63,532 nt of DNA, filler included, from Octopus bimaculoides (GCF_001194135.2; 3 parts of 3 records of this genome joined end to end with filler, not necessarily neighbours in it); one strand, 5' to 3'. Shown: positions 49,751-50,779, counted from the first letter of the whole stretch. The notes: a model not told the origin generated them from the letters alone. Numbers and translations are program-made.

Positions 49751-50583
49751 TATATATATANNNNNNNNNNNNNNNNNNNNNNNNNNNNNNNNNNNNNNNN
49801 NNNNNNNNNNNNNNNNNNNNNNNNNNNNNNNNNNNNNNNNNNNNNNNNNNNNNNNNNNNNNNNNNNNNNNNNNNNNNNNNNNNNNNNNNNNNNNNNNNNN
49901 NNNNNNNNNNNNNNNNNNNNNNNNNNNNNNNNNNNNNNNNNNNNNNNNNNNNNNNNNNNNNNNNNNNNNNNNNNNNNNNNNNNNNNNNNNNNNNNNNNNN
50001 NNNNNNNNNNNNNNNNNNNNNNNNNNNNNNNNNNNNNNNNNNNNNNNNNNNNNNNNNNNNNNNNNNNNNNNNNNNNNNNNNNNNNNNNNNNNNNNNNNNN
50101 NNNNNNNNNNNNNNNNNNNNNNNNNNNNNNNNNNNNNNNNNNNNNNNNNNNNNNNNNNNNNNNNNNNNNNNNNNNNNNNNNNNNNNNNNNNNNNNNNNNN
50201 NNNNNNNNNNNNNNNNNNNNNNNNNNNNNNNNNNNNNNNNNNNNNNNNNNNNNNNNNNNNNNNNNNNNNNNNNNNNNNNNNNNNNNNNNNNNNNNNNNNN
50301 NNNNNNNNNNNNNNNNNNNNNNNNNNNNNNNNNNNNNNNNNNNNNNNNNNNNNNNNNNNNNNNNNNNNNNNNNNNNNNNNNNNNNNNNNNNNNNNNNNNN
50401 NNNNNNNNNNNNNNNNNNNNNNNNNNNNNNNNNNNNNNNNNNNNNNNNNNNNNNNNNNNNNNNNNNNNNNNNNNNNNNNNNNNNNNNNNNNNNNNNNNTA
50501 TATATATTACTGTTAATACTTCATTTAGAGAATTAACATTGCTTATATATATATATTATTTAAAAGCAGCAGAAATATCACAA

Positions 50584-50629
50584 AAAAATGCTATTCAGAG
50601 TTTCACGTTCCCGTTCGTCGGACAGTTTT
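50584..50629 (-). ncRNA. Type I hammerhead-like motif (CCGACGA core variant)
   Basis: AAAACTGT-CCGACGA-ACG-ggaa-CGT-GAAA-CTC-t-GAA-TA-GCATTTTT, with one mismatch in stem III and one in stem I. Confidence 0.6.
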
Positions 50630-50642
50630 GTTAGATTCTAAC

Positions 50643-50688
50643 AAAACTATCCGACCAACGGGAACGGGAAACTCTGAGTAACAGTTTT
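50643..50688 (+). ncRNA. Type I hammerhead-like motif, core mutated
   Basis: AAAACTAT-CCGACCA-ACG-ggaa-CGG-GAAA-CTC-t-GAG-TA-ACAGTTTT. Stem III and the GUA triplet are intact but G8 is changed to C. Confidence 0.55.
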
Positions 50689-50779
50689 TGTGATATTTCT
50701 GCTGCTTTTAAATAAAGCATATTACCCTACTTCTGGTATTTTAGTACTCTTTTTTCCACCTTATTACACATTTATGTAT

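What the first reader, a model, noticed from the sequence alone, without database searches (positions are those of the whole stretch)
50556..50715. 160-bp palindrome encoding one hammerhead ribozyme on each strand
Seen: the two arms are diverging inverted copies. Their consensus folds as a complete type I hammerhead: stem I AAAACUGU/ACAGUUUU (8 bp), core CCGACGA, stem II ACG-GGAA-CGU, GAAA, stem III ACUC-U-GAGU, and a GUA cleavage triplet. The minus arm keeps the core and the plus arm keeps stem III and the triplet, so each copy alone is damaged. Known: minimal hammerheads with very short stem III loops occur in Penelope-like element (PLE) pseudo-LTRs and are reported to cleave as dimers, and PLEs often form inverted arrangements. 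Inference: this is a non-coding PLE-derived foldback unit with ribozymes in both polarities and a U4-to-C core variant. No coding sequence is visible beside it, but a 750-bp gap abuts the left side.
Basis: partly seen in the sequence, partly recalled or inferred. Interest (0 to 1): 0.75.

Follow-up and report, generated by a model that had tools for sequence, protein, structure and literature searches.

The report
Worn palindrome with hammerhead-like relic
The 158-bp DNA palindrome is real, but neither strand carries an intact hammerhead ribozyme; at most it is a dead, back-to-back remnant of a ribozyme-bearing mobile element, and any RNA made from it would fold into one long hairpin.

Summary
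The palindrome is real. It spans 50557-50714, with two ~79-nt arms 91% alike and one centre base. It lies in (TA)n microsatellite, 58 bp from a 738-N gap, in SINE-rich non-coding DNA.

The hammerhead exists only as a chimera of the two arms. Against a type-I hammerhead model the minus arm has 3 defects and the plus arm 4. Random sequence of the same make-up reaches 3 defects about once or twice per window. Both arms share C at the U-turn position U4 and A at 10.1. The plus arm has also lost G8.

Rfam gives no hammerhead match at E<=10, even for each arm searched alone. The hammerhead fold costs +1.4 and +6.1 kcal/mol in the real arms, against -104.5 for the whole-palindrome hairpin. Five of the six substitutions between the arms break the model, and none is compensatory.

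The best-of-both-arms consensus has only one defect (U4C). Random arm pairs treated the same way reach that in 3 of 95,000 trials. Descent from a hammerhead-bearing retroelement end (PLE-like head-to-head truncated copies in a TA repeat) is therefore plausible, at about even odds, but untested. No other copy, reads or genome were available.

Verdict: an ordinary decayed repeat, not two ribozymes.

The parts
50557..50714 (.). Imperfect DNA palindrome (foldback). It has two ~79/80-nt arms and a single centre base at 50636. The outer 32 nt and inner 12 nt of the arms are identical; all differences lie between them.
50637..50714 (+). Right arm, read on the + strand (arm R).
50557..50635 (-). Left arm, read on the - strand (arm L).
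50643..50688 (+). Hammerhead-like stretch of arm R:
- helix I 5' strand, 50643-50650: AAAACUAU (2.2 mispaired)
- core, 50651-50657: CCGACCA (C4 and C8)
- helix II, 50658-50667: ACG-GGAA-CGG (A.G at 10.1/11.1)
- GAAA, 50668-50671
- helix III, 50671-50679: ACUCUGAGU
- H17 = A at 50680 (GUA)
- helix I 3' strand, 50681-50688: ACAGUUUU
Total 4 defects; the hammerhead fold costs +1.4 kcal/mol.
50584..50629 (-). Hammerhead-like stretch of arm L:
- helix I 5' strand, 50629-50622: AAAACUGU
- core, 50621-50615: CCGACGA (C4)
- helix II, 50614-50605: ACG-GGAA-CGU
- GAAA, 50604-50601
- helix III, 50601-50593: ACUCUGAAU (C.A at 15.2/16.2)
- H17 = A at 50592 (AUA)
- helix I 3' strand, 50591-50584: GCAUUUUU (U.C at 1.4/2.4)
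Total 3 defects; the hammerhead fold costs +6.1 kcal/mol.
50544..50556 (.). (TA)n microsatellite directly against the left end of the palindrome. Possibly the insertion target. No unambiguous target-site duplication: a TA or TTAA duplication would be absorbed into the palindromic ends.
   Evidence: reading of the sequence
49761..50498 (.). Assembly gap of 738 N, 58 bp to the left of the palindrome. What it hides is unknown.

Best explanation
This is an old, real foldback: two inverted copies of a ~79-nt unit joined at a symmetric centre, sitting in TA-microsatellite within a SINE-dense, non-coding stretch of a draft animal genome.

The unit most likely descends from the 3'-terminal part of a retroelement that carried a type-I hammerhead with a short palindromic helix III (a PLE pseudo-LTR or a retrozyme-like derivative). 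It would have been laid down as head-to-head 5'-truncated copies. This ancestry is inferred, at about even odds.

The ribozyme is dead. The copy that was duplicated already had C at U4 and A at 10.1. Since then each arm has collected 2-3 private lesions with no compensating changes.

Nothing catalytic is expected now. A transcript of either strand would pair the hammerhead-like arm with its own antisense arm into a ~78-bp hairpin. At most this would be a substrate for double-strand RNA processing (inferred, not shown).
For: Shown:
- Palindrome geometry and hairpin energy.
- Arm identity of 91% rather than 100%, which argues against a library or assembly artefact.
- Defect counts of 3 and 4 for the real arms, and chance rates at that level.
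- No descriptor hit in the piece and no Rfam hammerhead match at E<=10.
- Unfavourable hammerhead fold energies, +1.4 and +6.1 against -104.5 kcal/mol for the hairpin.
- Five of six substitutions break the model, one is neutral (A-U to G.U at 1.1/2.1), none is compensatory.

For hammerhead ancestry:
- The two-state consensus has a single defect. That was reached by 0/16,000 and 3/95,000 simulated arm pairs, and by about 1 position in 3 Mb of plain null sequence.
- Helix III (ACUCUGAGU) is a quasi-palindrome, as in metazoan type-I hammerheads (PMC4209133).
- The T at 11.1 in arm L is what CpG decay of the canonical C11.1-G12 step would give (inference).
- Head-to-head 5'-truncated copies, (TA)n targets and assembly trouble are published PLE traits (PMC8557442).
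Against: - There are only two copies, so ancestral states are ambiguous. The consensus was chosen to fit: only 2 of 64 chimeras pass.
- How many palindromes the first stage inspected is unknown, so the p of about 3e-5 carries an unknown look-elsewhere factor.
- U4C, A10.1-U11.1 and a 3-bp helix II with no bulged base depart from both canonical and PLE minimal hammerheads.
- No RT/GIY-YIG remnant, no tandem partner and no other copy lie in the 14,033 non-N bases.
- Naiad PLEs, the clade reported to favour (TA)n, lack canonical hammerheads.
- The differences between arms cluster inside the motif while the outer 32 nt are identical. That looks more like conserved transposon ends than a conserved ribozyme (p about 0.04).
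Confidence: 0.5

Rival explanations
1. Chance resemblance. The palindrome is a short foldback or MITE-like DNA element, or a local inverted duplication made by template switching in an unstable TA-repeat. It has no ribozyme ancestry, and its only property is hairpin or cruciform formation.
For: - Each real arm is at chance level: 3-4 defects, against about 1-2 three-defect and about 10 four-defect hits per 127 kb of null sequence.
- No Rfam match.
- The outer 32 nt and inner 12 nt of the arms are perfectly conserved while the 'ribozyme' part carries all the differences, as expected if the ends matter.
- An exact symmetric centre with one unpaired base.
- A TA or TTAA target duplication would be hidden inside the palindromic AT-rich ends (reading).
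- The neighbourhood holds other inverted repeat pairs, at 51009-51330 and at 49706-49752/50805-50844.
Against: - The two-state consensus reaches one defect, which simulated random arm pairs do in only 3/95,000 trials.
- No clear target-site duplication.
- The termini do not look like well-known TIR starts (my recollection, not tested).
- No second copy in the piece to show mobility.
Confidence: 0.35
2. One reading: a working hammerhead pair with a C4 core variant. It would cleave as a dimer, possibly as a heterodimer. In that case the minus-strand RNA supplies the intact core and helix II, and the plus-strand RNA supplies helix III, the GUA site and the helix I strand.
For: - The lesions are complementary: all three 'enzyme-half' lesions are on the plus arm and both 'substrate-half' lesions are on the minus arm (p about 0.06 by my count).
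- Helix III is quasi-palindromic, as dimeric action requires.
- The consensus fold is feasible on its own: -6.0 kcal/mol against an MFE of -8.0.
Against: - C4 lies in the U-turn, where single and double mutants had low activity (PMC9901934).
- PLE minimal hammerheads cleave poorly in vitro even when canonical.
- The hammerhead fold has positive energy in both real arms.
- The competing intramolecular hairpin is about 100 kcal/mol more stable.
- No covariation and no Rfam score.
Confidence: 0.04
3. A hairpin-RNA gene (a miRNA or endo-siRNA precursor) whose function is the long stem itself.
For: - A near-perfect 78-bp stem, z = -20.8.
- Generic matches to miRNA precursor models: mir-4773 at 41.5 bits, MIR395 at 36.3 bits.
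Against: - All these matches are far below the gathering scores (100 and 56). They are the kind any long hairpin gives, and the TA/TG microsatellites of the piece score similarly.
- The stem is far longer and more perfect than an animal pre-miRNA (general knowledge).
- No expression data could be obtained.
Confidence: 0.06
4. An assembly artefact next to a gap: a chimeric or fold-back join made by the assembler or the library.
For: - A 738-N gap lies 58 bp away.
- The piece has six gaps, all bounded by microsatellite.
- Inverted PLE-type structures are known to trouble short-read assemblies.
Against: - Fold-back artefacts give identical arms. Here the arms differ at 6 sites plus an indel.
- Joining two different copies at exactly the same truncation point is unlikely.
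Confidence: 0.05

Closest known systems
Metazoan type-I hammerheads with short palindromic helix III (satellite/retrozyme type; Rfam Hammerhead_1, RF00163)
   Same: - The order of elements along the strand: helix I strand, 7-nt box, helix II hairpin, GAAA, short helix III, UH site, helix I strand.
- GAAA with A15.1-U16.1 and H17 = A.
- Quasi-palindromic helix III (ACUCUGAGU), which would allow a dimer.
   Different: - CCGA instead of the CUGA U-turn in both arms, and G8 lost in one arm.
- A-U or A.G instead of G10.1-C11.1.
- Helix II of 3 bp instead of 4; helix I open, with no loop 1.
- No tandem repeat of 170-400 bp.
- No covariance-model score at E<=10.
Minimal hammerheads of Penelope-like element pseudo-LTRs (Cervera and de la Pena 2014)
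   Same: - An inverted, truncated arrangement with the motif near the outer (3') ends.
- A microsatellite setting.
- Dual motifs on opposite strands are reported.
- Palindromic 15.2-16.2 in the plus arm.
- Low or no monomer activity expected.
   Different: - No 6-8-bp helix II and no bulged base between A9 and 10.1.
- No G10.1-C11.1.
- Helix I of 8 bp instead of 4-5.
- No RT/GIY-YIG ORF or pLTR nearby.
- Family membership could not be tested, because no other copy was available.
Foldback / MITE-like palindromic repeats
   Same: - The whole unit is one hairpin.
- Perfectly matching ends.
- AT-rich insertion context.
- Non-coding.
   Different: - No demonstrable target-site duplication.
- No recognisable superfamily TIR.
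- Copy number unknown.

Membership tests
Hammerhead ribozyme (type I) | Core box C3-U4-G5-A6-N7-G8-A9 | tested here: not met
   Arm L has CCGACGA (C4). Arm R has CCGACCA (C4 and C8). Mutants of the CUGA turn have low activity (PMC9901934).
Hammerhead ribozyme (type I) | G12-A13-A14, an A15.1-U16.1 pair, and H17 not G | tested here: met
   Both arms have GAAA...U-A. The triplet is GUA in arm R and AUA in arm L.
Hammerhead ribozyme (type I) | Three helices closing on the core, with a conserved G10.1-C11.1 pair | tested here: not met
   The 10.1/11.1 pair is A-U (arm L) or A.G (arm R). Each arm has one broken helix I pair, and arm L has C.A at 15.2/16.2. The hammerhead fold costs +1.4 and +6.1 kcal/mol. 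No descriptor hit with up to 2 core mismatches.
Hammerhead ribozyme (type I) | Score against the curated covariance models (Rfam hammerhead families) | tested here: not met
   No hammerhead family at E<=10 in the whole piece, in 281 nt, or in each 64-nt arm alone. Caveat, from my own knowledge: these models may also miss PLE minimal motifs.
Hammerhead ribozyme (type I) | Conservation of the core and covariation of the helices among copies | tested here: inconclusive
   Only two copies exist (the arms). There are 6 substitutions: 5 break the model in one arm, 1 is neutral (A-U/G.U), and none is compensatory. No further copies could be reached.
Hammerhead ribozyme (type I) | Site-specific self-cleavage | not testable with these tools
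   This needs in vitro transcription or RNA-end mapping.
Penelope-like element (pLTR with minimal hammerhead) | Association with an RT + GIY-YIG ORF, or with pLTR copies of a PLE family | tested here: not met
   No such ORF in the piece, and no Pfam domain in its non-repetitive ORFs. The 738-N gap could hide sequence.
Penelope-like element (pLTR with minimal hammerhead) | Minimal-hammerhead traits: helix II of 6-8 bp, an extra base between 9 and 10.1, G10.1-C11.1, palindromic 15.2-16.2 | tested here: not met
   Only the palindromic helix III is present, and only in arm R. The other three traits are absent.
Penelope-like element (pLTR with minimal hammerhead) | Inverted or tandem 5'-truncated insertion units with a microsatellite target | tested here: inconclusive
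   The head-to-head arms with (TA)n on the left and 73 nt to the right are compatible. They are equally compatible with a foldback of another origin.
Non-LTR retrozyme | Tandem repeats of 170-400 bp, each with one type-I hammerhead | tested here: not met
   No direct or tandem copy of the unit in the piece.
MITE / foldback DNA transposon | Terminal inverted repeats plus a target-site duplication, in a multi-copy family | tested here: inconclusive
   The TIRs are trivially present. A TA or TTAA duplication cannot be told apart from the palindrome itself. Copy number is unknown.
miRNA / hairpin-RNA precursor | Match to a known precursor family above threshold, or small-RNA reads | tested here: not met
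   The best matches are mir-4773 at 41.5 bits (gathering 100) and MIR395 at 36.3 bits (gathering 56), both generic hairpin matches. Expression is not testable here.

The most novel reading that the evidence does not exclude
The unit belongs to a live family whose hammerhead carries a CCGA turn (C4) with an A10.1-U11.1 pair, and which acts only as a dimer. At this locus, RNAs from the two strands would complement each other. The minus-strand arm would give the core and helix II. The plus-strand arm would give helix III, the GUA site and the helix I strand.
Probability: 0.03. Interest if true: 0.75.

Novelty: new member of a known kind. Interest (0 to 1): 0.2.

Why it matters
As it stands it matters little. 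It is one more decayed repeat in a repeat-rich intergenic or intronic stretch, and a reminder that a 'consensus' of two diverged arms can build a motif that neither copy has.

It would matter only if the genome held a family of such units with a conserved C4 core and covarying helices. That would be a natural hammerhead breaking the U-turn rule. It would also show how PLE-type elements leave palindromic ribozyme relics in this genome.

Tried and rejected
1. Rfam search (4227 models), run four ways: whole piece, 281 nt, and each arm alone. No hammerhead or other ribozyme; only generic miRNA-hairpin models below threshold.
2. My own type-I descriptor on both strands of the piece with 0-2 core mismatches: no hit.
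3. Search for further copies of the arm, its conserved end and its flanks in the piece: none.
5. A 41-aa translation across the palindrome searched against 5.8 billion proteins, hoping for called ORFs on other copies: no candidate.
6. Exact-pattern scans with the core stretch in the metagenome, prokaryote-genome and viral collections, and with the conserved end in the first two: 0 matches. This was expected for an animal repeat.
7. Full-text search for the arm and SINE sequences in papers: 0 hits. The supplement of the PLE paper is not held.
8. Pfam scan on the eight least repetitive ORFs of the piece: nothing real. There was one sub-threshold zinc-finger hit at 17 bits against a cutoff of 25.
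9. tRNA scan: none.
10. Target-site duplication by eye: ambiguous, so not used as evidence.
11. Organism: the tRNA-derived SINE with a (TA)n(TG)n tail reminds me of octopus genomes. This is memory only and not tested, so nothing rests on it.

Full report
**Observation**

The stretch 50556-50715 does hold an inverted repeat. The repeat finder reports arms 50583-50635/50637-50689 (53 nt, 89% complementary, 1 nt between) and 50549-50586/50685-50722 (38 nt, 92%). Aligning the plus-strand right arm with the reverse complement of the left arm gives a strict palindrome at 50557-50714, about 79/80 nt per arm. The arms differ by six substitutions and one 1-nt indel. All differences lie in arm positions 13-48. 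The inner 12 nt and outer 32 nt are identical. As RNA, the 160 nt fold into one hairpin of -104.5 kcal/mol, against -26.9 +/- 3.7 for shuffles (z = -20.8). The palindrome is real and far beyond chance.

**The hammerhead claim**

| Element | Arm L (minus strand, 50629 to 50584) | Arm R (plus strand, 50643 to 50688) |
|---|---|---|
| Helix I, 5' strand | AAAACUGU | AAAACUAU |
| Core box | CCGACGA | CCGACCA |
| Helix II | ACG-GGAA-CGU | ACG-GGAA-CGG |
| G12-A15.1 | GAAA | GAAA |
| Helix III | (A)CUCUGAAU | (A)CUCUGAGU |
| H17 | A | A |
| Helix I, 3' strand | GCAUUUUU | ACAGUUUU |

I scored each arm against the type-I hammerhead scheme: 11 fixed core positions, H17, 6 bp of helix I, 3 bp of helix II, and 2 bp of helix III beyond 15.1-16.1.

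- Arm L has 3 defects: U4C, C.A at 15.2/16.2, and U.C at 1.4/2.4.
- Arm R has 4 defects: U4C, G8C, A.G at 10.1/11.1, and A.C at 2.2/1.2.

A stricter descriptor finds nothing on either strand of the piece, even with two core mismatches allowed.

Rfam (4227 covariance models, permissive filters, E<=10) gives no hammerhead or other ribozyme family. This holds for the 16.8-kb piece, for 281 nt around the palindrome, and for each 64-nt arm searched alone. Only generic miRNA-hairpin models appear, well below their gathering scores.

The hammerhead secondary structure costs +1.4 kcal/mol in arm R and +6.1 in arm L, while their own minimum-energy folds are -6.6 and -5.7. Each arm alone folds no better than its shuffles.

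**How much is chance**

In first-order Markov sequence with the composition of the piece, I scanned 288 loop and stem architectures.

- Three-defect matches occur at 26 per 3 Mb (5 per 0.3 Mb in a smaller run).
- Four-defect matches occur at about 80 per Mb.
- That is roughly 1-2 and 10 per 127 kb, the two strands of one window.

Each real arm is therefore unremarkable.

The consensus is a different matter. A one-defect match occurred once in 3 Mb of plain null sequence. At most one defect was reached in 0 of 16,000 trials (piece composition) and 3 of 95,000 trials (arm composition).

So the resemblance of the reconstructed ancestor to a hammerhead is not trivially explained by chance for one pre-specified palindrome (p about 3e-5). 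Three caveats apply:

- Only 2 of the 64 possible chimeras pass.
- With two copies the ancestral states cannot be polarised.
- I do not know how many palindromes the first stage looked at.

**Signs of selection**

There are none for a ribozyme. Of the six substitutions, five break the model in one arm: 2.2, G8, 11.1, 16.2 and 1.4. One is neutral (A-U against G.U at 1.1/2.1). None is compensatory. The differences are concentrated inside the supposed ribozyme while the ends of the arms are identical (range test p about 0.04). That is the opposite of what a conserved catalytic core would show.

Both arms share C4 and A10.1, so these were already present when the palindrome formed. C4 lies in the CUGA uridine turn. 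In a comprehensive single- and double-mutant map of a hammerhead, all mutants of this turn had low activity except the C3:G8 swap (PMC9901934). The G10.1-C11.1 pair is described as highly conserved in canonical and PLE hammerheads (PMC4209133).

**Context**

The piece is non-coding as far as can be seen. Its ORFs are microsatellite translations or run through gaps, and the eight least repetitive ones have no Pfam domain. There are no tRNA genes. It has six N-gaps bounded by microsatellite, leaving 14,033 real bases.

A ~380-nt SINE-like repeat occurs at least six times, at 46728-46910, 49560-49705, 50878-51078, 51170-51545, 55899-56055 and 60310-60721. The palindrome's arms and flanks are unrelated to it and have no second copy in the piece.

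The palindrome abuts (TA)7 on its left. Another (TA)7 lies 73 nt to its right, and the 738-N gap lies 58 bp to its left. A 33-47-nt inverted pair (49706-49752 and 50805-50844, 94%) brackets the whole (TA)n-gap-palindrome-(TA)n block.

**Comparison with what is known**

Metazoan type-I hammerheads typically have helix I of 6 bp, helix II of 4 bp, and a helix III of 1-2 bp capped by a small palindromic loop. They act as dimers. PLE minimal hammerheads differ:

- Helix II is 6-8 bp.
- There is an extra base between A9 and 10.1.
- G10.1-C11.1 is conserved.
- The 15.2-16.2 pair is palindromic.
- In vitro activity is low.
- They can occur as pairs on opposite strands 100-700 bp apart (PMC4209133).

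PLE insertions are often 5'-truncated, with an inverted truncated copy alongside. Naiad-clade PLEs favour (TA)n, and such insertions upset short-read assemblies. However, the Naiad clade lacks canonical hammerheads and survives only as old remnants in cephalopods (PMC8557442).

The locus shares with these the element order, the GAAA/UH boxes, the quasi-palindromic helix III, the head-to-head geometry with the motif towards the outer 3' ends, and the TA-repeat and gap setting. It fails on the core (C4, and C8 in one arm), the 10.1-11.1 pair, helix II length, the bulged base, any nearby RT/GIY-YIG sequence, and any tandem arrangement.

So it may work like, or rather have once worked like, such an element. 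Membership cannot be claimed.

**Mechanism**

The best reading is a dead relic. A 79-nt 3'-terminal piece of a hammerhead-bearing retroelement, already mutated at U4 and 10.1, was fixed as a symmetric head-to-head pair and then drifted.

'One ribozyme on each strand' is simply what a palindrome gives. In a transcript of either strand the hammerhead-like arm is preceded by its own antisense arm, and the two pair into a ~78-bp stem about 100 kcal/mol more stable than the ribozyme fold. I therefore expect no self-cleavage. If the locus is transcribed at all, the product is a long hairpin (inferred).

I put about 0.5 on this reading, about 0.35 on a foldback or MITE-like palindrome with a coincidental motif, and a few per cent each on a hairpin-RNA gene, an assembly artefact and a working C4 ribozyme. 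That neither arm is an active hammerhead as it stands I hold at about 0.9.

**What could not be done**

The decisive test is a family consensus from the source genome. Indirect routes gave nothing:

- a peptide search across the palindrome;
- exact-pattern scans of the metagenome, prokaryote and viral collections;
- full-text searches for the sequences.

**Verdict**

This is an ordinary decayed repeat with a suggestive but broken motif. Interest is low unless a genome-wide family with a conserved C4 core turns up.

Noticed in passing
window 46728-46910, 49560-49705, 50878-51078, 51170-51545, 55899-56055, 60310-60721: At least six copies or fragments, in both orientations, of a ~380-nt SINE-like repeat. 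It has a tRNA-like head and a (TA)n(TG)n tail, at 70-84% identity, so the piece is a repeat graveyard. From memory it resembles the abundant octopus SINE; this was not tested.
   Followed up: partly
window 49706-49752 and 50805-50844: A 33-47-nt inverted pair (94% over 33 nt), each arm next to a (TA)n tract. It brackets the whole block of (TA)n, gap, palindrome and (TA)n. The left arm continues a full SINE copy, so the pair may be two converging SINE 3' ends, or the ends of a larger unit partly hidden in the gap.
   Followed up: partly
window 51009-51330: A second, larger foldback (arms ~40-75 nt, 83% complementary, ~180 nt apart) built from inverted partial copies of the SINE-associated repeat. 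It scores 60 bits on the plant MIR2646 model (gathering 245), which is a generic hairpin match.
   Followed up: partly
window 51722-51799 and 51954-52031: Two direct copies (76-80%) of a 78-nt unit containing GGGATTTGAACTC, which looks like the reverse of a tRNA T-arm. Possibly a second tRNA-derived SINE family.
   Followed up: no
window 47758-48090, 49761-50498, 52424-52558, 53520-53702, 56225-56680, 61761-62710: Six runs of N, each bounded by TA, TG/CA or other microsatellite. Only 14,033 of the 16,828 bases are real sequence. Many sub-threshold Rfam 'mir-297/mir-3149/mir-466' matches are just TA/TG microsatellite.
   Followed up: yes
window 50557-50714: All 7 differences between the arms fall in arm positions 13-48, while the outer 32 nt and inner 12 nt are identical (range test p about 0.04). 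This would fit constraint on the ends, as for transposon termini, or gene conversion from the ends and the centre.
   Followed up: partly
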